NCBI GenBank assembly: GCA_037447605.1 | Contig: CM074808.1 | Span: forward strand, 1,302,001 to 1,366,000 | Source: Zygnema circumcarinatum SAG 698-1b | Taxonomy: Eukaryota; Plantae; Zygnematophyceae | Length of the DNA stretch: 64,000 nucleotides | Direction of reading: 5' to 3' | Part shown: positions 14,882-22,925 of the stretch, one piece after another | Layout: every line of letters begins with the position of its first letter | Position numbering within the stretch: the first letter of the stretch is position 1 | Position numbers and translations under genes: made by a program | Notes under the pieces: model-generated | The model's input: only the letters and a program-made list of their open reading frames with translations | Told to the model about the DNA's origin: nothing | Databases searched by the model: none

Positions 14882-17800
14882 CTATGCCAGCCTCCTCTCT
14901 TCCTCGTGCGCCTCAAAAGCCATTTTCAGCGCTTCTTCTGCAGAGCTGAGAAGGGACTGCGCCTCAGCCCCAGCTCCTTGGAGGTCCCTGCTCTGCCGAA
15001 TACGAGCTGCGAGCTCAACCGTAGATTGCCGCCAAAGATTGGCCTTCTCTCGCATTGCTGACAGCTGCATTATCCCACCCATTCAATATGTAAAAAAAAA
15101 AAAAAAAAATACTTGAATGAATATCGTCAAACTAAGCTGTCCTGATGACACAAAATAGTTGCACACTTTGAAGCTACGAAAGCAGCGTGCAAAGCCATCC
15201 GAGGACCTCTGTAAAGGATTGGATGGAAGCTGCAAGCTCGATTTAGACAACGCATGGCAGCCTGCCTCAGGGTCATGGGCTTCAGGCCTCCTCTCGCTCA
15301 GCAGAAAACACGCACGCAAAAGCCGTAAAGTGGTGATAAGAACGGACGCTTACCCTTCGAACATACTCTTGGTCCAGCTCTTCCAAAGCTATTAGCATGC
15401 CTTGCGAGTCGGATGCAGCCCCGTCTTCTATTGCCTGACTCCTCTCTCCGTGTGACCGTTGTTTCTGCCGGAAAACCTCCCGATCACGAAACCTGCGTGT
15501 GCGGGTTCGAAGTGGCCTATCCGAATAATCCAAGTGAGAGTCTCCTAGGATGTGCTCTCTCTCTTCGGCATCCCCCTCCTTCACTTCCGTTCTCCTCCGC
15601 TGCCGTCCTCCTCCCTCGCTCCCATCATCAGACGAAACGTACCCTGATCGAAGCACTCCGTCCGACCGCAGGGCTGTCGGCTCCTGGAGAATTGGCGGGA
15701 GCTTCCCATTCAGAGGTAAAGTTCCCACTGACAGGTGGTTAGGTGGACGAGAAAGGACTGCTTTCTTTGATGGAACGGGCACTACTGCATGGAACAGCGT
15801 GAAGTCCTGCGAAATGTTGGGTGGAACATATTGTTAGGCTGAGAAAACGAGAGAGGAGTCTGAGAACCGGGTGAAAACTGTGTGAACATAGAAAAGTAAC
15901 AGGGAAAGTGGTAGAAATGCTCGGAAGGACCCTGACTCAGCCAGAACTGAGAGAGATAAACCTTTGCCAAACACCGTGACAAAGGAAGGCTAAGCAATGG
16001 ATGTACACTAGAATAAAGAGCTACGTGGTTGTGAAACAAATGGTGAGCTTGAAGAACAGCCAGAATGGATGAAGGATAGGCGAAGAGTAAGAACACAAGG
16101 AGAAGGAGAGGATATTGTAGGCTATAGGAGGCAAATCTGCAATGAAACAATGCAGGGACATTCAAGCGGTGGAGACTAACCAAGCCCTGACACCCGTAAT
16201 TGAATGTTCAGCCATCATCATGCAATGGCTCTCTGAGCAAAAATATAAGGGGCACGCAAGAGTTGGGAATATGCAAGAGGTGGAAATTACCACGCAGCGC
16301 AGTCCATTTGGCAGCCTGGTCACCATAGTTCTGTAGCACATCGCCTCAAAAAAAAAAAAGTCACATCAGAGGAGCAACAATGCTAAAGCGAAACTCTAAA
16401 CGCACTCGGGAAGTGCGCAAAGACTTACATTCTGCAAGTGCTGCAAGTTTCGTCAACTTGAAGTCTCTAGAAAAAAAACCTAAACAGATAAGGACGGTAA
16501 AAACGAAGACATGATACAAAGGAGGAGGGACTTCTTCCTAGTACCACTGACAATGCAAAAGAAAAACCAAGAAATCAAAGGCACACTCTTCTGGCCTGCT
16601 CGCAAGGCATATTCGTCTATAAGTTGCCGATCGGGGAACAGAATCTACTGCAAATACATGTCAGCATCTCTGATCTATACTCATTATGAAGCCAAAAATG
16701 ACACGTTGACACTACAATACAGGCATTGCCTCGCAAGTAGTGACAGAATAAAGACCCGGCCCGCTGCACAGTAGCTCCATGTTTGCAAAAATCTTCTAGT
16801 TTCCGTCACTACTATTTCCGGCATCCTTGCTGTCAGCCTTGTTTCAAGCTTACAAACGACCGCTTTCTCCCTTCGCAGCCATCCTCGCCGGAGAAGCTGA
16901 AACTTCTTGTCATTCAACCCATTCATGCCACTGCCTTATCCATCAACACTTTAAGGAGGAAGCCAACCGGCTGGCCTTGCGGTAGGAAGCCGTGTATGCC
17001 AAATCACGCCTTTCAGTTACTTCAGACTACATAGAACATGGGATTACGCGCCCTGTCGGAAGACAGGTGGGTTATAGCCACTTACACAAAGCGGTGGTTA
17101 TACATAATGTCGCTGGCCCGGTACGAATGACGCGCTGTTACCACCCACGCAATGGTCCAAATAAGACAGCAAACCTGCCAGGATATGACACAGATAAGAC
17201 TGCCCTAGCCAGCAGTACCTCATGATTAAGATAGTGTTCAACGATCACTGACTCAATTCCTTCTGGTCCAGCACTACGCAGTTTGCTTCCTTAGAAGGTG
17301 GACAGTGATGCTGTTTTTCCGTCGCATTCCATGACCCCGCAGATACGTTTTCCCCATAAACGCAGTCCAGAATGAGAGGGCCCCTTTATGCTCACCTTGT
17401 ATCCTAGCAGAAGTGGAAGCATCAGTCCCTTCCAGCAGTACAAGAATCTCCATGTCGCATCGTTCCATCATCTGCATTGGGCAGCCGCAGGCAGCAAACT
17501 TTCCAATAAAAAACAACAAAAAAACAAAAACTATAAAGTACAATGTAAATGTATAGTCCGCTCAAACCCTCCGCTGGCCTACTTGGGAATATTAGATCAC
17601 ATACTGACAAGTCAAATGTCTTCCCCTCAATACTTTGGTCCGAACTACAGTGAAAGGGCCTCCATGACAGTAGTAGCCCCCTATACAAATCTCACTAAAT
17701 ATATTTTATTGAATTTTATCTACAGAGGCTGCACTCCAGTTGTTTGATTATTTCCAGATTTCATGATACTGGCACTTGACAAGGATGCCGACGATCGAAC

Positions 17801-20800
17801 CTTGGGTGGAAGACAATGCAAGATAAACTCATTAATTATGCTCCCAAGACAAAGAAAACATCAAATTTCTTCTGCTGGCCACAAGCGGTTGGCAGCGTTA
17901 GCTGAGGCACGTGTAAAATCATGTTGTTCGACTGCAACCTCAGGATAGCTCAAAGAGCTGTCCATCGACTGACTAAAGGACATAGGCTGCAGCTAACCAT
18001 AAATTTCAAGTGCTGATGCTTGTTTGTGGACACAGCATGCACAGGCCCTTAGCCCTGGAGTGCATTCCACAGCATGTGAGTTCGAACATGTAATTCCATC
18101 AATTGAAACCCACTTTGAGTTGGTTGGAATTTCACGATTTGGACTGACCAAGATATGCATTACACTCTCGATCTTGTTGAAGTCCTCTAATGGAGAAATG
18201 GAGAGAATTGGATAAGTGGATTTCTCTCAACAGGGCTCTCTCCGCGGTACCGGGCAAGACTTAAGTACACAGCTGTTTCCCCTTCAGTGCAAGGAGTTCT
18301 TTCCTGACTTCATTGTTTACAAGAAAATGGCTGCTGACATCCACAGTCACCGCTTTCATGATCACTGCTACATGCTTGCTCCCATACAACTTACCACACA
18401 GGACATGCCATAAAGGGGACTGCTGCTGGTCACGGGGTGTGCGATTGTGAAGGGCAGCCCCAAGAAGACTTGGCTGCTGCCGGGCACCTGCACAGGAGGA
18501 TGGCAGGCATTAGCAGCCCGACTTGCCTTGCTGCTCTCTCCTCCTTAAGAGTTCATTGTTCTTCATTCACATGCCTATTCGTAGGGATCATGGCTGCTGC
18601 ACTCACAGGGACGGCAGTGAAGCGGAAGATGGATTCGTGCTCTTCAGTCATGACATTGTCCAAAGCCACCAGCATCCGAACAGTTACCTGCAACGCTCCA
18701 ACAGTTACGGAGACATCTTTACAGCTGTCCATGTAGACAGACAAATCCAGGGCTCAAAGAAACGAGGAAAAGGACGACAGAAAAGAAAAACAATAACGAT
18801 AGTCCCCCAAAAGACTGCTAACAAGGGAACATAACAGTTGGTAGAACGAGAAATGTTGCGTTTAGAATCCGCAGGCCGGGGAGTCTCCGTCCACAAACAC
18901 CTATTGTTGACTACTACAGCGACAACTTGCAAGGGTGAGTTCAAACCTCGATAAGCTGATGCTTCCTGAGGTTTGCCACCCGGCAGGCAAGTCTGGGAAC
19001 ACCATTGTCCTGCACGCGAAATTGCGATGACTTCAGTTACAGTTATAATTACAGTTATAGTTGAGATTAACAGTTACAGTTATAGGGGCCTAAAGAAGTT
19101 GCAACGATCTCATTGGTTCCTCAACAAGCAGAGGAACACTGCTTCTATGGGTACAAAGTGCACAGGGGCAATTTTCCATATTAGCACGATCAAAGAGATG
19201 CAAAAAAGCACCGAAACAGGGAGCAGTATCGATGCAATAACGTGATTGAAAAAAACATATGTTCTTTCCCATAACAACGGTTGTCAATACTGTCAACCTA
19301 TGACATCACTTTGACCTTGGAGAATGCACTGTCTGCAAACGATAAATCATTTGTATACCTCACGCTATGAATGACAATGTGTTCCAATGCACAGTTGAGC
19401 CTGCCTAGACTGCGAGTTGCCTGCAGCTCAATGCTTATTTGTACCTCGTGAAGAACCATTTTGTGACTGAATACGACAGTAGACACGCGTCTGCTCGGCC
19501 GAGAGAATCTGGCAGGCAGCAGGAGAGGCGGGAGACCGGGATCGGACAAGCAGGTCAGAGGGTTGACAAGGAAAAATGGTCATTGCATGGAATCTGCAAA
19601 CCTTGTGCAACACATTTCTCAACTGCTTCTCACACTCATGTAGAGGAGAGCCTCAAACTCAAGGTCGAAATCAAACCCTCGACTGATTTTTTCCAGGCGA
19701 CAAGTCCGTACAGCGGCTCAACCTCCTCTCCTTCCTCTATCGCCCCCGCCTCTAAGCATTCCTCACATTGAACTCTTTAAGAAACGAGAAGAAAATAGCA
19801 AGCATCACATGCAAAAGATCCTTCGGACAAAAAGGTGGTGCAGTTCAGTAACTCACACCTTGCATACACGAGCCCAAGGAGAGAATAAGCAGCCAATAAG
19901 CTTGCCACAGATTGCGCTGCAACAGCGACATTGGTAAGAAGACAGGTAGGGTCCGGCGTCAGATCTCCACCATAGCCTGCAATAAAAAATGGGAACACAC
20001 TATCAGCAAGCCCAACAACGAGCGAATCATCCGGAAAAACTATCGTAACCTTCAAAAGGATTGTACTCCAGAATGAACTGGCCACAAACATAAGCTCCAC
20101 GCAGAAGCGTGCTTTCATCGTGCTTTGAAGAACTTAAGTTGTCGTCGCTTTATTGCTCCTACTTTTACAGTTGTCAGCTATAACCACGAGCATGCCGGAA
20201 GTCTGACATGTCACGATTTTTTTTTTGGCCGAGGCAAATGATTCAGGTACACTTGGAGCACGCAAAACCTTTCTCTGCCTGGTTGGCCTACTGCTCCGGA
20301 ACAGCGAGAGCTGTGTACAAGCATCAATGGCAGCAAAACTAAGGCTCCCTGGGAGGGAAATGCAGATCTTACCAATGGTCATCGCCGTCTGAACACTGCC
20401 ATGCAATCCAACCACCCCCACTGCACAGAGGTCAGATACCCCCAGTCTCACAATGGCAAGAGTGCAGCAACTGCCACGGAGTACTGACCCGGTACTCAAA
20501 GTTTGCGCAAGGGGCGGAATCAAGCAAGTTATTGAAGCACGCGTTGTGCCTCAAACACTGCTGCAGTGGTCGTGACTGAACTCGTAATGGAGAAGTTTGC
20601 ATCACGAGAGTCACCTGAACCAGACAGCGTGTGTGTATGTGTACACTCCCGGAATGCAGTTATTGTTCCACGCCTGCGTCCGCAGAGCCCGTATGTAAGA
20701 AAGTAATGTCAATTCGGCCGTTAGCATTTCTCAACTAATCTCCTGCACACTGTCGCCTTTCCTTAAGAAGCAATTGGGAGAAGGTCAAAGGAGCTCTAAG

Positions 20801-22291
20801 TAGCGAATGAGAGGGTCATCGAAGTAAACTACAAATTTTCACACATTGCGAAAGCTGCTCAATATCCATGATATCCAATTCAGTGCTATACCATTGAATT
20901 CATATATACCATTTGGCGAAGAATCGGCATGTGCAGTCACGGTTCAAACTCACTATGCCAGAGCAATGACAATGGGATGAGTTATGTAACCCATTACATT
21001 GAGAAACCAGATCGTCTGCCTTGCCTTCATACGGCTTGACATACATCAACACTAATTTCTGCGGATGGGAAAATGTGTCGGCACTGGCCAGTGAATTCTG
21101 AAAGATACTTGTACTTTTGAAAGCAGATGAAGGAACTGCGACTGGAAAAAACGATGGCAATGACAATGGGTAGGACAGAATCACTGCTGCAGCTGTAGGA
21201 ACGTTGCTGACTTCTAGATGGCAAACTCTGGATTTCAACTGGATATGTTTACTTCTCAAATATTCTAACTGTGGAAGACAAAGTATTTCAGTTACCAGGT
21301 CGAGATGTTGACACTTCAAATCTTCTTGTCAAAGTGCATGTTGACGGTTCAGTTGACGTGACCAAGCAGCCAAGGAACAACATCAGATCCCTTCAGACCG
21401 GATGCGTATGGGTTTAGTTCAACTTGGCAGCTGGCAGTTGACACTTGGGAGCGGCTGCGTGAGGTAGTTACTGTGCCAAGATTAGGAATTGGCTACCCAA
21501 ATAACTGATACACTTATGATCAATCATGTTACAAAATCGTGCTTGTATAAGATTCAGCCCTTTCTGAAGACAAGAATGCCTCGGAGTCCCTTCTACAATG
21601 TACTCGAGGCACGGAGCAGGAGAAGCAAGGTACCAACCTCGTAATGGTAAACAAGCGCAAATAAGCCAAATAAAAGGCAATAAGTTCCAATAAGGACCAA
21701 ATAAAAACGAGAATTCGGCACCTGCAACCACCTCAACCCAAGGTGCCTCTAGCCATAAGTCAACTCTGGCAGTATGTTCCATCAGGCCAGGTTGGCTGAT
21801 CCTAAAAATCTGAAGGAAACAAGGGGCTACAAAGAAGGCACAAAGTATATGCCAAAGAAAAAATCTTAAATGGCGAGCCAAATTATCACTTACGTTCACG
21901 AGAGTATGAAAGAGGTCGCCTGCGTAAAGCTTGAGCTTGGGATATCCATGAAGCTCGATATTCAACTCTCCTCTGTTGCAGATACGCTCCCACGCTTAAT
22001 CAAAAAGCGTCGAACTACAAACAGTCATTGAAAGCAAAGCACCAAAACACACTCAAATGCCCTGAACAAGCAATCAACCCGACCAAACCAACTCCTCCCA
22101 GGCACAGTGCCTCACTTTTCATCCACCAGCGGTCGGTGTGGCTCTGCAGCATGACACCTCCACTGACTGCCGCTCCCCCGGCCACCCGCATCCTCCACCG
22201 GCGGCGCGAGCAGCGGCTGCAGGAGCGGCTCTCCCTTTCTCCCCCGTCCCTCCGCGGGCTGCAGGAGCGCCTCCGTCCTGCGCTTGGGCAT
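14882..22291 (-). CDS. Inward-rectifier potassium channel (Kir/IRK family), about 15 exons
   Basis: The spliced model reads LVDEKGELNIELHG...GDLFHTLVN, M1 RFYLVLIGTYCLLFGLFALVY, NNCIPG...AVWFSVQTAMTIGYGG..PTC, M2 QSVASLLAAYSLLGLVYARFSRPSRR, CRVANLRKHQLIE, FTIAHPVTSSSPLY, EILVLLEGTD..IQARHSY and DFTLFHAV, all collinear with Kir2-type channels. Confidence 0.92.
19023..19086. repeat. Degenerate 6-mer tandem repeat (ACAGTT/ATAGTT) in a Kir intron
   Basis: Direct reading: cagttacagttataattacagttatagttg...acagttacagttatag. Confidence 0.7.
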
Positions 22292-22314
22292 GGCGGCTGC
22301 GCCGGACTGCCCCC

Positions 22315-22925
22315 CCCTCCTCCTCCCCGCATCCCCTCCCCTCCCCTCCCCTCCCCTCTCCTCCTCTGCCCTCTCGTCCCCTCCCCTCCTGCCCCCTCGA
22401 GCAGGCCCTGGCAGGTGCGGGCGGGCAGGCGGGCAGGCGAGCAGCCGCGGAGGGCGGCTGCCGGCGGCTGCTGGATGGGGCCGGATCATGCCACGTCATG
22501 CCTCGGCCCGCGCCATGTCATGTCATCCCATGCCATGTCATGGCATGAGATCCGCGGCCGCATCGGCTTGGACGCATCCGCTGCCGCCACGTGTACTTTC
22601 CGCGCGGCCCTTTCCCTTTCCAGCGAACCACAAACCGACAGAATCCAACACGTCATCCGTACGGCTACGCGCCATAGCGACCGAGCTTTGGCGCCAAGCG
22701 GTCGGAACCGACAAAGATATCCCGATAGTTCCCATATGGCGTATCGTATCGATACCGATACGATGTGGTACGGTCCATCCCTGGCCTCGCGTACAGTATT
22801 CCTTTGGGGTGGAATTTTCCTCTGAGCGGTGCGCCCTCCCTTTCTCTCCTGCAAGGGAGGGGGAGGGGAGGGGAGGGGAGGGGAGGGGAGGGGAGGGGTC
22901 TGGCTTGCGGAGGAGGAGGAAGGGC
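22315..22925. repeat. Oppositely oriented (CCCCT)n and (GGGGA)n tracts flanking a GC-rich promoter core
   Basis: Pyrimidine tract at about 22315-22395 and purine tract at about 22855-22925. Confidence 0.85.

What the first reader, a model, noticed from the sequence alone, without database searches (positions are those of the whole stretch)
14882..22291. True Kir/IRK channel in a streptophyte, predicted weak rectifier
Kir channels are known from animals, prokaryotes and some algae but are considered absent from land plants, whose inward rectifiers are Shaker-type. This copy keeps the TIGYG filter, both extracellular Cys, the basic PIP2-type stretch ARFSRPSRR and the cytoplasmic acidic sites matching Kir2.1 E224 and E299. 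It has Ala at the D172 rectification position. It bears on K+ transport systems lost during the move to land.
Basis: partly seen in the sequence, partly recalled or inferred. Interest (0 to 1): 0.75.

Follow-up and report, generated by a model that had tools for sequence, protein, structure and literature searches.

The report
Kir-type potassium channel gene in alga
This alga has a working, 15-exon gene for an inward-rectifier-type (Kir/IRK) potassium channel; the same gene family is already in databases for other algae close to land plants and for mosses and liverworts, so it is real but not new.

Summary
A minus-strand gene runs from the ATG at 22291 to the stop at 14882-14884. It has 15 exons, all introns are GT..AG, and it encodes 546 aa. 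Spliced RNA contigs from four runs in three studies confirm 11 of the 14 introns and the donor end of a twelfth, including the intron that splits TIG|YG. A local profile built from 49 bacterial-side IRK proteins scores the spliced protein 243.7 bits (shuffles at most 5.8). Exons 10 and 11 hit Pfam IRK_C on their own.

The closest relative is P0001, 65% identical end to end.

Orthologues exist, some already named inward rectifier, in Klebsormidium, Chara, Mesotaenium, Spirogloea, Closterium and Mesostigma. They also exist in the land plants Marchantia, Riccia, Calypogeia, Physcomitrium and Ceratodon. So the family was not lost at the move to land; no named vascular-plant hit was found.

Two further points: the D172 site reads D in chlorophytes, N in Klebsormidium and A from Chara onward, and all streptophyte members share an undescribed C-terminal helical hairpin.

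Verdict: new member of a known kind.

The parts
22116..22291 (-). Exon 1 (coding part): Met1 to the first two bases of codon 59. It encodes the variable N-terminus. Transcript contigs extend upstream to at least 22348 (5' UTR).
   Evidence: The joint 21972|22116 is seen in three of the four runs (X1, X2, X4), and RNA contigs reach 22344-22348. The homologue P0001 also starts MPKR.
21894..21972 (-). Exon 2: residues 59-85, the N-terminal slide-helix region (GELNIELHG...DLFHTLVN).
   Evidence: RNA joints. It aligns to the KirBac3.1 N-terminus through P0001.
21638..21721 (-). Exon 3: residues 86-113, outer transmembrane helix M1.
   Evidence: RNA joints. Hydropathy peak at residues 89-112.
20615..20673 (-). 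Exon 4: residues 114-133, the short turret with Cys119 (equivalent to Kir2.1 C122) and the start of the pore helix.
   Evidence: RNA joints. Alignment to Kir2.1 through P0001. Codon coordinates.
20373..20395 (-). Exon 5 (23 nt): residues 133-141, the end of the pore helix and T139-I140 plus the first base of G141 of the selectivity filter.
   Evidence: Joints 20395|20615 and 19976|20373 are seen in all four runs. Codon coordinates.
19859..19976 (-). Exon 6: residues 141-180. It holds the rest of the filter (GYG), the post-filter loop with Cys152 (equivalent to C154), and inner helix M2 with Ser163 and Ala170 (Kir2.1 D172 site, codon 19888-19890).
   Evidence: RNA joints. As a query it found 22 relatives. 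Aligned to Kir2.1.
19445..19508 (-). Exon 7: residues 180-201, the basic C-linker RFSRPSRR and the first CTD strand (VVFSH).
   Evidence: RNA joints. The linker has the same length as in Kir2.1 and is 3 residues longer than in KirBac3.1.
18947..19009 (-). Exon 8: residues 202-222, a CTD strand ending in Glu222 (Kir2.1 E224 site, codon 18947-18949).
   Evidence: RNA joints. The NLRKHQLIE motif is conserved.
18607..18687 (-). Exon 9: residues 223-249, CTD.
   Evidence: RNA joints.
18395..18487 (-). Exon 10: residues 250-280, CTD (FLGLP...H.....SPLY motif).
   Evidence: RNA joints. On its own this exon hits Pfam IRK_C with E=8.7e-4, profile positions 65-91.
17396..17471 (-). Exon 11: residues 281-306, CTD with Glu294 (Kir2.1 E299 site, codon 17430-17432).
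   Evidence: RNA joints. On its own this exon hits IRK_C with E=0.17, profile positions 95-118, colinear with exon 10.
17086..17134 (-). Exon 12: residues 306-322, CTD (RHSY...NHRF).
   Evidence: Joint 17134|17396 in all four runs, and a loose end at 17086.
16291..16330 (-). Exon 13: residues 322-335, CTD.
   Evidence: The 30 loose-end letters in the RNA contigs lie at 16301-16330. The donor GTAATT is inferred. Colinear with P0001.
15354..15806 (-). Exon 14: residues 336-486. It holds the end of the CTD (DFTLFHAVVPVP), a roughly 130-aa low-complexity linker predicted to be disordered, and the start of the C-terminal helix.
   Evidence: Inferred from an AG acceptor, a GTAAGC donor and the reading frame. 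P0001 aligns across the whole exon. There is no RNA joint evidence.
14882..15064 (-). Exon 15: residues 487-546 plus the TAG stop. It holds most of the conserved C-terminal helical hairpin.
   Evidence: Inferred acceptor after a poly-T tract. The module is conserved across streptophyte members. In the P0001 model it forms a helical hairpin with pLDDT about 90.

Best explanation
Positions 14882-22291 on the minus strand hold an intact, transcribed, correctly spliced 15-exon gene. It encodes a 546-aa subunit of the inward-rectifier (IRK/Kir, TC 1.A.2) potassium channel family. It is one orthologue of a family inherited vertically in green plants.

**Shown here**
- The layout is: a variable N-terminus, a slide-helix region, M1, a pore helix with a TIGYG filter, M2, a basic linker, and a beta-rich IRK_C cytoplasmic domain (residues about 52-349). 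After that come a roughly 130-aa linker predicted to be disordered and a roughly 70-aa helical hairpin.
- The hairpin is conserved in Klebsormidium, Chara, Zygnematophyceae and bryophytes.

**Inferred**
- Four subunits form a K+-selective pore.
- The cysteine pair makes the extracellular disulfide known from animal Kirs.
- The basic linker has the eukaryotic length (R180, R183, R186, R187). It couples the transmembrane gate to the cytoplasmic domain through an anionic lipid such as PIP2.
- Rectification, if polyamines or Mg2+ block the pore, depends on the cytoplasmic ring (E222, E294). The M2 site is Ala170, so rectification is predicted to be weak to intermediate, not Kir2-like strong.
- The C-terminal hairpin is a lineage-specific assembly or regulatory module.
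For: **Splicing and expression.** 11 introns are removed exactly at GT..AG in contigs of four runs from three studies, and the donor side of a twelfth is marked by a loose end.

**Open frame.** The spliced ORF is open over 546 codons.

**Profile matches.**
- A local HMM built from 49 bacterial-side IRK proteins scores the joined protein 243.7 bits over residues 52-349. Shuffles score 5.8 or less.
- Pfam IRK_C is hit by exon 10 alone (E=8.7e-4) and by exon 11 alone (E=0.17), colinearly.

**Closest relative P0001.**
- It is 65% identical end to end and 84% identical in the core.
- It carries IRK_C (E=7e-28) and IRK (E=7e-13).
- It matches KirBac3.1 (E=1e-42) and Kir2.2 (E=1e-34) by sequence.
- It matches them by fold, Foldseek E=1e-26 and E=1e-24.

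**Residue mapping.** Mapping to Kir2.1 comes.

**Purifying selection.** In the core pN is 0.086 against a saturated pS of 0.77.

**Phylogeny.** The tree gives a Viridiplantae clade at 100 support. The window gene sits inside the streptophytes next to Mesotaenium and Closterium. A bryophyte clade has 99 support.

**Topology.** Only two hydrophobic helices are present.
Against: - No functional data exist for any green-plant member that I could find.
- The acceptor of intron 12 and introns 13 and 14 are inferred, not seen in RNA.
- The joined protein itself was not run against Pfam, PDB or a structure predictor, because a spliced model has no reference. Those results come from a 65%-identical proxy and from single exons.
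- Exon 6 (filter plus M2) gave no Pfam or PDB hit on its own.
- Overall similarity does not say whether regulation is animal-like or bacterial-like. P0001 scores higher against KirBac3.1 (150 bits) than against Kir2.2 (123 bits). As I recall it, KirBac1.1 is inhibited, not activated, by PIP2.
- Membrane location is unknown.
Confidence: 0.88

Rival explanations
1. The gene is a decaying or non-functional relic. It is transcribed but no longer encodes a working channel.
For: Low-depth unspliced contigs and one minor mis-spliced form (17471|17801, depth 16 against 297) are present. The strong-rectifier Asp in M2 has been replaced by Ala.
Against: - The frame is open across 15 exons, with all splice sites canonical.
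- The filter is an intact TIGYG.
- In the core pN is 0.086 against pS 0.77.
- The same Ala is fixed in Chara, Zygnematophyceae and bryophytes, so it is a lineage state and not decay.
Confidence: 0.03
2. It works like a prokaryotic KirBac rather than an animal Kir. On this reading it is a lipid-inhibited, barely rectifying K+ leak, inherited from the cyanobacterial ancestor of the plastid.
For: - P0001's best solved match is KirBac3.1, at 150 bits against 123 for Kir2.2.
- The best named prokaryotic hits are cyanobacteria: Dulcicalothrix, Calothrix and Scytonema, at E about 1e-40 to 1e-37.
- The turret is short, as in KirBac.
Against: - All green members except Chara have the two cysteines at the Kir2.1 C122 and C154 sites.
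- They have a post-filter loop and a C-linker of the same length as in Kir2.1, which is 3 residues longer than in bacteria.
- They have an acid at the E299 site, where bacteria have T or S.
- Basal green members have Asp at the D172 site.
- The chlorophyte member P0019 matches animal Kir6 and Kir2 (108-112 bits) better than KirBac3.1 (76 bits).
- In the tree the green clade does not nest inside cyanobacteria. However, that tree holds no animal sequences and is unrooted.
Confidence: 0.12
3. The stretch is contaminant DNA (animal or bacterial) assembled into the algal genome.
For: Kir channels are best known from animals and bacteria.
Against: - It has 14 spliceosomal introns.
- RNA of the same organism label covers it at 99% identity or more in three studies.
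- Its nearest relatives are Zygnematophyceae and other streptophytes.
Confidence: 0.01

Closest known systems
Unstudied green-plant IRK orthologues: Klebsormidium nitens GAQ89742.1 'Inward rectifier K+ channel', Chara braunii GBG86441.1 'ATP-activated inward rectifier K channel', Mesotaenium ME000552S08444, Marchantia polymorpha Mp2g08920 (PTQ45391.1), Physcomitrium patens XP_024396402.1
   Same: - Same IRK plus IRK_C core.
- Same cysteine pair, except in Chara.
- Ala at the D172 site (Asn in Klebsormidium).
- Glu at the E224 and E299 sites.
- Same RP.RR linker.
- Same disordered linker followed by a C-terminal helical hairpin, and similar length (480-630 aa).
   Different: - Sequence identity of the window protein is about 69% to Mesotaenium and 54% to Chara over the core; P0001 is 42-46% identical to Klebsormidium and the Marchantia proteins, and 56% over a shorter stretch to Physcomitrium.
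- Klebsormidium and Closterium have a TIGFG filter.
- Chara lacks both cysteines and reads LLEA.
- None has been characterised in any paper I could find.
Animal strong inward rectifiers Kir2.1 / Kir2.2 (PDB 7zdz, 3jyc, 3spi)
   Same: - Same fold (Foldseek E=1e-24) and TIGYG filter.
- Cysteines at the C122 and C154 sites.
- Ser at S165 and Gly at G177.
- C-linker of identical length, with 4 of 5 basic PIP2-site residues.
- Glu at E224 and E299.
   Different: - Ala instead of Asp172.
- Ser instead of Lys187.
- A much shorter turret and a shorter loop in the cytoplasmic domain.
- About 30% identity.
- An extra roughly 200-aa C-terminal extension with a helical hairpin.
- No PDZ-type C-terminus.
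Prokaryotic KirBac3.1 (PDB 1xl4, 7n9k) and cyanobacterial relatives
   Same: - Highest overall sequence score for the streptophyte subfamily: 150 bits, about 31-33% identity over 299 residues.
- Short turret.
- Glu at the E224 site.
   Different: KirBac lacks the cysteine pair. Its post-filter loop and C-linker are each 3 residues shorter. It has Thr instead of the E299 acid and has no C-terminal extension.
Arabidopsis KCO3 ('Kir-like' plant channel) and TPK channels
   Same: One pore loop between two transmembrane helices.
   Different: - KCO3 is a recent TPK2 duplicate that lost one pore (PMC3410407, PMC8619664).
- No TPK family was found here. The window protein and its relatives are assigned to IRK and IRK_C. 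Their only other Pfam matches are weaker hits to the generic pore-domain models Ion_trans_2 and Ion_trans.

Membership tests
IRK / Kir inward-rectifier K+ channels (Pfam PF01007 + PF17655) | Two-transmembrane pore domain that matches the IRK profile | tested here: met
   - The joined model scores 243.7 bits against a local profile of 49 bacterial-side proteins, nearly all of which carry IRK and/or IRK_C.
- Two hydrophobic helices are present.
- P0001, 84% identical in the core, hits PF01007 with E=6.9e-13 against a cut-off of 22.7 bits.
- Caveat: exons 3-6 alone gave no PF01007 hit, and the joined protein was not scanned against Pfam.
IRK / Kir inward-rectifier K+ channels (Pfam PF01007 + PF17655) | Beta-rich cytoplasmic C-terminal domain (IRK_C) | tested here: met
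   - Exon 10 alone: E=8.7e-4, 19.4 bits.
- Exon 11 alone: E=0.17, 12 bits, colinear with exon 10.
- P0001: 97.9 bits.
- The modelled CTD has pLDDT above 90 and is all-beta.
IRK / Kir inward-rectifier K+ channels (Pfam PF01007 + PF17655) | K+ selectivity filter T-x-G-Y/F-G | tested here: met
   T139-I140-G141-Y142-G143. It is created by the RNA-confirmed splice 20373|19976.
IRK / Kir inward-rectifier K+ channels (Pfam PF01007 + PF17655) | Tetrameric K+-selective conductance | not testable with these tools
   Needs electrophysiology or yeast complementation.
IRK / Kir inward-rectifier K+ channels (Pfam PF01007 + PF17655) | Inward rectification by polyamine or Mg2+ block (acidic residues at the Kir2.1 D172, E224 and E299 sites) | tested here: inconclusive
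   The D172 site is Ala170. The E224 site is Glu222 and the E299 site is Glu294. The strength of rectification cannot be read from sequence.
Eukaryotic-type Kir (as opposed to KirBac) | Extracellular cysteine pair (Kir2.1 C122-C154) | tested here: met
   Cys119 and Cys152 align to C122 and C154. The pair is conserved across green members except Chara and is absent in bacteria. Disulfide formation itself is not testable.
Eukaryotic-type Kir (as opposed to KirBac) | Long basic TM-CTD linker forming the PIP2 site (Kir2.1 K182, K185, K187, K188, R189) | tested here: met
   The equivalents are R180, R183, S185, R186 and R187, with no gap against Kir2.1. There is a 3-residue gap against KirBac3.1 and other bacterial members. 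PIP2 dependence itself is not testable.
Prokaryotic KirBac | Short linker, no cysteine pair, about 300 aa with no C-terminal extension | tested here: not met
   The window protein has the long linker, the cysteines and a 200-aa extension.
Plant Shaker-type inward rectifiers (KAT/AKT) | Six transmembrane helices with a voltage sensor, and a cyclic-nucleotide-binding homology domain | tested here: not met
   Only two hydrophobic helices are present. No CNBD or ankyrin family appears in the relatives.
TPK / KCO3 plant channels | TPK-derived pore(s) with EF hands or a 14-3-3 site | tested here: not met
   Pfam assigns the relatives to IRK and IRK_C. The only other matches are weaker hits to the generic Ion_trans_2 and Ion_trans pore models, and no EF-hand family was found.

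The most novel reading that the evidence does not exclude
Streptophyte Kirs, from Klebsormidium to bryophytes, form an undescribed functional subfamily with three features.
- The rectification-controlling acid moved out of M2. The D172 site reads D in chlorophytes and Mesostigma, N in Klebsormidium, and A from Chara onward. Meanwhile a Glu appeared at the E224 site.
- A conserved C-terminal helical hairpin, absent from animal and bacterial Kirs, was added as an assembly or regulatory module.
- The family survived the move to land and was lost only on the line to vascular plants.

This would make it a candidate for part of the K+ inward-rectifier currents recorded in characean cells. It would also be a missing entry in published plant K+ channel inventories.
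Probability: 0.45. Interest if true: 0.55.

Novelty: new member of a known kind. Interest (0 to 1): 0.4.

Why it matters
Reviews of plant K+ transport list Shaker, TPK/KCO, HAK, HKT and, for bryophytes, BK-like channels. One inventory explicitly says that moss and Selaginella lack TM-P-TM channels (PMC3410407).

The data here show a vertically inherited true IRK family in green algae, streptophyte algae, liverworts and mosses. No named vascular-plant member was found. This moves the loss from 'the move to land' to a later point.

The family also offers ready genetic models for a first functional test: Marchantia Mp2g08920 and Physcomitrium XP_024396402.1.

The gene in this window adds one more orthologue, with RNA-verified structure. 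It does not add a new kind of channel.

Tried and rejected
- **Pfam on raw stop-to-stop pieces** gave nothing relevant. The exons are 8-39 aa apart from exons 1, 14 and 15.
- **Word search with the ORF around exon 6** found nothing, because only proteins of 65-206 aa were eligible.
- **Exon 6 against PDB and Pfam** gave no hit even at E=10.
- **ESM Atlas with exon 14** (the disordered linker) gave no usable hit.
- **Nine literature searches**, plus reading seven held papers, found no description of green-plant IRK channels. The Chara genome paper is not held. Many 'Kir' hits were the author names Kirst and Kirkby.
- **dN/dS** could not be computed because synonymous sites are saturated. Only pN and pS are given.
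- **Whether green Kirs are sister to animal Kirs or to bacterial ones** could not be settled. No animal sequence could be fetched into the tree. Pairwise PDB scores are contradictory: the streptophyte P0001 favours KirBac3.1, the chlorophyte P0019 favours Kir6/Kir2, and a cyanobacterial member is as close to Kir2.2 as the green ones are.
- **The origin of P0001, P0032 and P0043** could not be established. They are Logan transcripts from SRR8128904, SRR33208242 and SRR32617123, and no organism is given.
- **The joined 546-aa model** was built only inside scripts from window.fa. It was never sent to a search tool.


Full report
**What is in the sequence**

The region is eukaryotic and rich in introns. 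Stop-to-stop translation of the minus strand shows Kir-like pieces in different frames.

Contigs of four public runs were laid on 16400-22350. The runs come from three studies and carry the same organism label. They show 11 clean intron joints of the main transcript, every one CT..AC on the plus strand, which is GT..AG on the minus strand, plus one minor alternative joint noted below. Each main joint appears in three or four of the runs. Genomic DNA cannot give such joints, so the gene is transcribed and spliced.

After applying the tool's 'cut +N' shifts, the exons are:
- exon 1: 22116-22291
- exon 2: 21894-21972
- exon 3: 21638-21721
- exon 4: 20615-20673
- exon 5: 20373-20395
- exon 6: 19859-19976
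- exon 7: 19445-19508
- exon 8: 18947-19009
- exon 9: 18607-18687
- exon 10: 18395-18487
- exon 11: 17396-17471
- exon 12: 17086-17134

All have canonical splice sites. A loose end at 17086 carries 30 letters that lie at 16301-16330. This fixes the start of exon 13.

Exons 13 (16291-16330), 14 (15354-15806) and 15 (14882-15064) were then placed by GT/AG sites and reading frame. The result is an open frame of 546 codons from the ATG at 22291 to the TAG at 14884-14882. Introns 13 and 14 have no RNA evidence here.

**Is it a Kir?**

Single exons are too short for most profile searches. Even so, exon 10 alone hits Pfam IRK_C (E=8.7e-4). Exon 11 hits the next part of the same profile (E=0.17).

An exhaustive search with exon 6 (39 aa) found 22 relatives. 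The best is P0001, a 540-aa product of a Logan transcript contig. It aligns with the spliced model from its first residues (MPKR) to its last helix at 65% identity, and at 84% in the core. That independently supports the whole exon model, including the inferred 3' exons and the start codon.

P0001 and nine other relatives carry Pfam IRK and/or IRK_C far above the curated cut-offs.

A profile built locally from 49 bacterial-side family members scores the joined window protein 243.7 bits over residues 52-349. The best of 200 shuffles scores 5.8.

P0001 matches KirBac3.1 (E=1e-42), Kir2.2 (E=1e-34), Kir2.1, Kir6.2 and Kir3.2 by sequence. Its AlphaFold model has pLDDT above 90 for the core and matches the same structures by fold.

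That test is not met, so the claim stands.

**The residues**

A HMMER alignment of P0001:105-200 with full-length human Kir2.1 (7zdz, residues 120-206) has a single one-residue gap. P0001 is identical to the window protein at all the sites below. The mapping is:

| Window protein | Kir2.1 |
|---|---|
| Cys119 | C122 |
| TIGYG 139-143 | 142-146 |
| Cys152 | C154 |
| Ser163 | S165 |
| Ala170 | D172 |
| Gly175 | G177 |
| R180, R183, S185, R186, R187 | K182, K185, K187, K188, R189 |

The linker has the animal length. KirBac3.1 and all bacterial members need a 3-residue gap there, and another in the post-filter loop.

Glu222 lies in the NLRK..(I/V)E motif and Glu294 in the (I/L)LEG motif. These correspond to Kir2.1 E224 and E299. 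That mapping rests on my knowledge of the Kir2.1 sequence and on the constant +2 offset.

**Selection**

Against the P0001 coding sequence, synonymous sites are saturated (pS 0.77). Non-synonymous change is 0.086 in the core, 0.28 in the C-terminal module and 0.38 in the linker. The core is under strong purifying selection.

The names attached to the relatives show that the family is already in public databases for these streptophyte algae:
- Klebsormidium nitens GAQ89742.1, 'Inward rectifier K+ channel'
- Chara braunii GBG86441.1, 'ATP-activated inward rectifier K channel'
- Mesotaenium
- Spirogloea (three copies)
- several Closterium species
- Mesostigma

It is present in chlorophytes too: Myrmecia, Trebouxia, Auxenochlorella, Cymbomonas and Prasinococcus.

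It is also present in land plants:
- Marchantia polymorpha (Mp2g08920 / MARPO_0015s0176) and M. paleacea
- Riccia fluitans
- Calypogeia fissa
- Physcomitrium patens (XP_024396402.1)
- Ceratodon purpureus

The land-plant genes sit on contigs of 0.3 to 66 Mb, most of them chromosome-scale.

In a maximum-likelihood tree of 87 sequences, the green-plant proteins form one clade (support 100). The bryophytes form a clade (support 99) inside the streptophytes. The window gene pairs with P0001 (support 99), next to Mesotaenium and Closterium. This roughly follows the species tree, so descent is vertical.

No named vascular-plant protein appears among the 120 listed of the 162 hits with E at or below 1e-10. 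Any orthologue would have ranked above the bacterial hits. The loss therefore happened after the origin of land plants.

Two unnamed transcripts, P0032 and P0043, branch at the base of the land-plant clade. Their organisms are unknown.

The literature I could search does not mention any of this. One inventory states that Physcomitrella and Selaginella have no TM-P-TM channel genes (PMC3410407). Plant 'Kir-like' there means the TPK-derived KCO3. None of the gene identifiers occurs in any held paper.

1. **The D172 site changes along the green tree.** It is Asp in chlorophytes, prasinophytes and Mesostigma, Gln in Auxenochlorella and Asn in Klebsormidium. It is Ala in Chara, Zygnematophyceae and bryophytes (Met in one moss cluster). 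The E224 site runs the other way: Q, R, H, K or D in the basal members, and Glu from Klebsormidium on. The E299 site is acidic in nearly all green members (Asp in several chlorophytes), but Thr or Ser in most bacterial ones.
2. **All streptophyte members share a C-terminal module.** From Klebsormidium on, after a poorly conserved linker of about 130 aa, they share a module of about 70 aa. The P0001 model shows it as a confident helical hairpin: helices 467-508 and 517-539, pLDDT about 90. No Pfam family covers it, and animal and bacterial Kirs lack it.
3. **Overall similarity does not place the family clearly.** P0001 prefers KirBac3.1. The chlorophyte P0019 prefers Kir6 and Kir2. A cyanobacterial member is as close to Kir2.2 as the green ones are. 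The indels and the cysteine pair are of the animal type.

**Mechanism**

Shown here: the gene structure, its expression, family membership, the pore and linker residues, and conservation.

Inferred:
- The protein forms a tetrameric K+-selective channel.
- It has an extracellular disulfide.
- Gating is coupled to an anionic lipid through the basic linker.
- Any rectification relies on the cytoplasmic Glu ring, because M2 has no acid.

By analogy with animal Kirs that lack the M2 acid, this predicts weak to intermediate rectification. As I recall the literature, Kir2.1 D172N still rectifies, so 'weak' is not assured.

Location in the cell and physiological role are unknown.

**Limits**

- The joined protein has no reference. 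It was built and analysed only inside scripts.
- Family, fold and Kir2.1 mapping rest on single exons, on a local profile and on the 65%-identical P0001.
- The organism names of the runs are coded. The scan's earlier notes call the genome a streptophyte alga, which fits the tree.

**Verdict**

This is a new member of a known, already annotated but functionally unstudied family. It is of moderate interest, mainly as a pointer to an overlooked plant K+ channel class that persists in bryophytes.

Noticed in passing
window 17472-17800 / 17801-18424: A minor alternative joint 17471|17801 appears in run X2 only, at depth 16 against about 297 for the main joint. It leaves 17801-18394 of intron 10 in the transcript, and stop codons there would end the frame. 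It is probably an unproductive isoform.
   Followed up: partly
window 22300-22900: The 5' UTR and upstream region are GC-rich and built of CT/GA-rich short repeats (TCCCC-type units). One run carries a 10-nt TCCCCTCCCC insertion after 22331, so the repeat length differs between samples.
   Followed up: no
P0008 (Chara braunii GBG86441.1): The Chara orthologue alone has lost both cysteines of the extracellular pair (Ser at both sites). It also reads LLEA instead of LLEG after the E299-site Glu.
   Followed up: no
P0020 (Closterium sp. Yama58-4, 1012 aa): This protein joins a partial Kir to a class IV aminotransferase domain (PF01063, E=2.5e-39). It is most likely two neighbouring genes merged by the gene caller. 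The Closterium members also have very long low-complexity linkers (862-875 aa proteins).
   Followed up: no
P0039 (Klebsormidium), P0013/P0014/P0020/P0046 (Closterium): These members have a TIGFG filter (SIGFG in P0046) instead of TIGYG, as in animal Kir6.
   Followed up: no
P0032 (L002) and P0043 (L003): Two transcript-derived Kirs of unknown organism (runs SRR33208242 and SRR32617123) branch at the base of the land-plant clade, outside liverworts and mosses. If they come from hornworts, lycophytes or ferns, they would date the loss more precisely.
   Followed up: partly
PMC3410407 versus P0044 (Physcomitrium patens XP_024396402.1): A published K+ transporter inventory says the moss has no TM-P-TM K+ channel gene. 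The current moss annotation holds a 485-aa IRK plus IRK_C protein on a 17-Mb contig.
   Followed up: yes
window 15083-15110: A run of 18 T lies on the coding strand just before the acceptor of the last intron. It forms an unusually long polypyrimidine tract.
   Followed up: no
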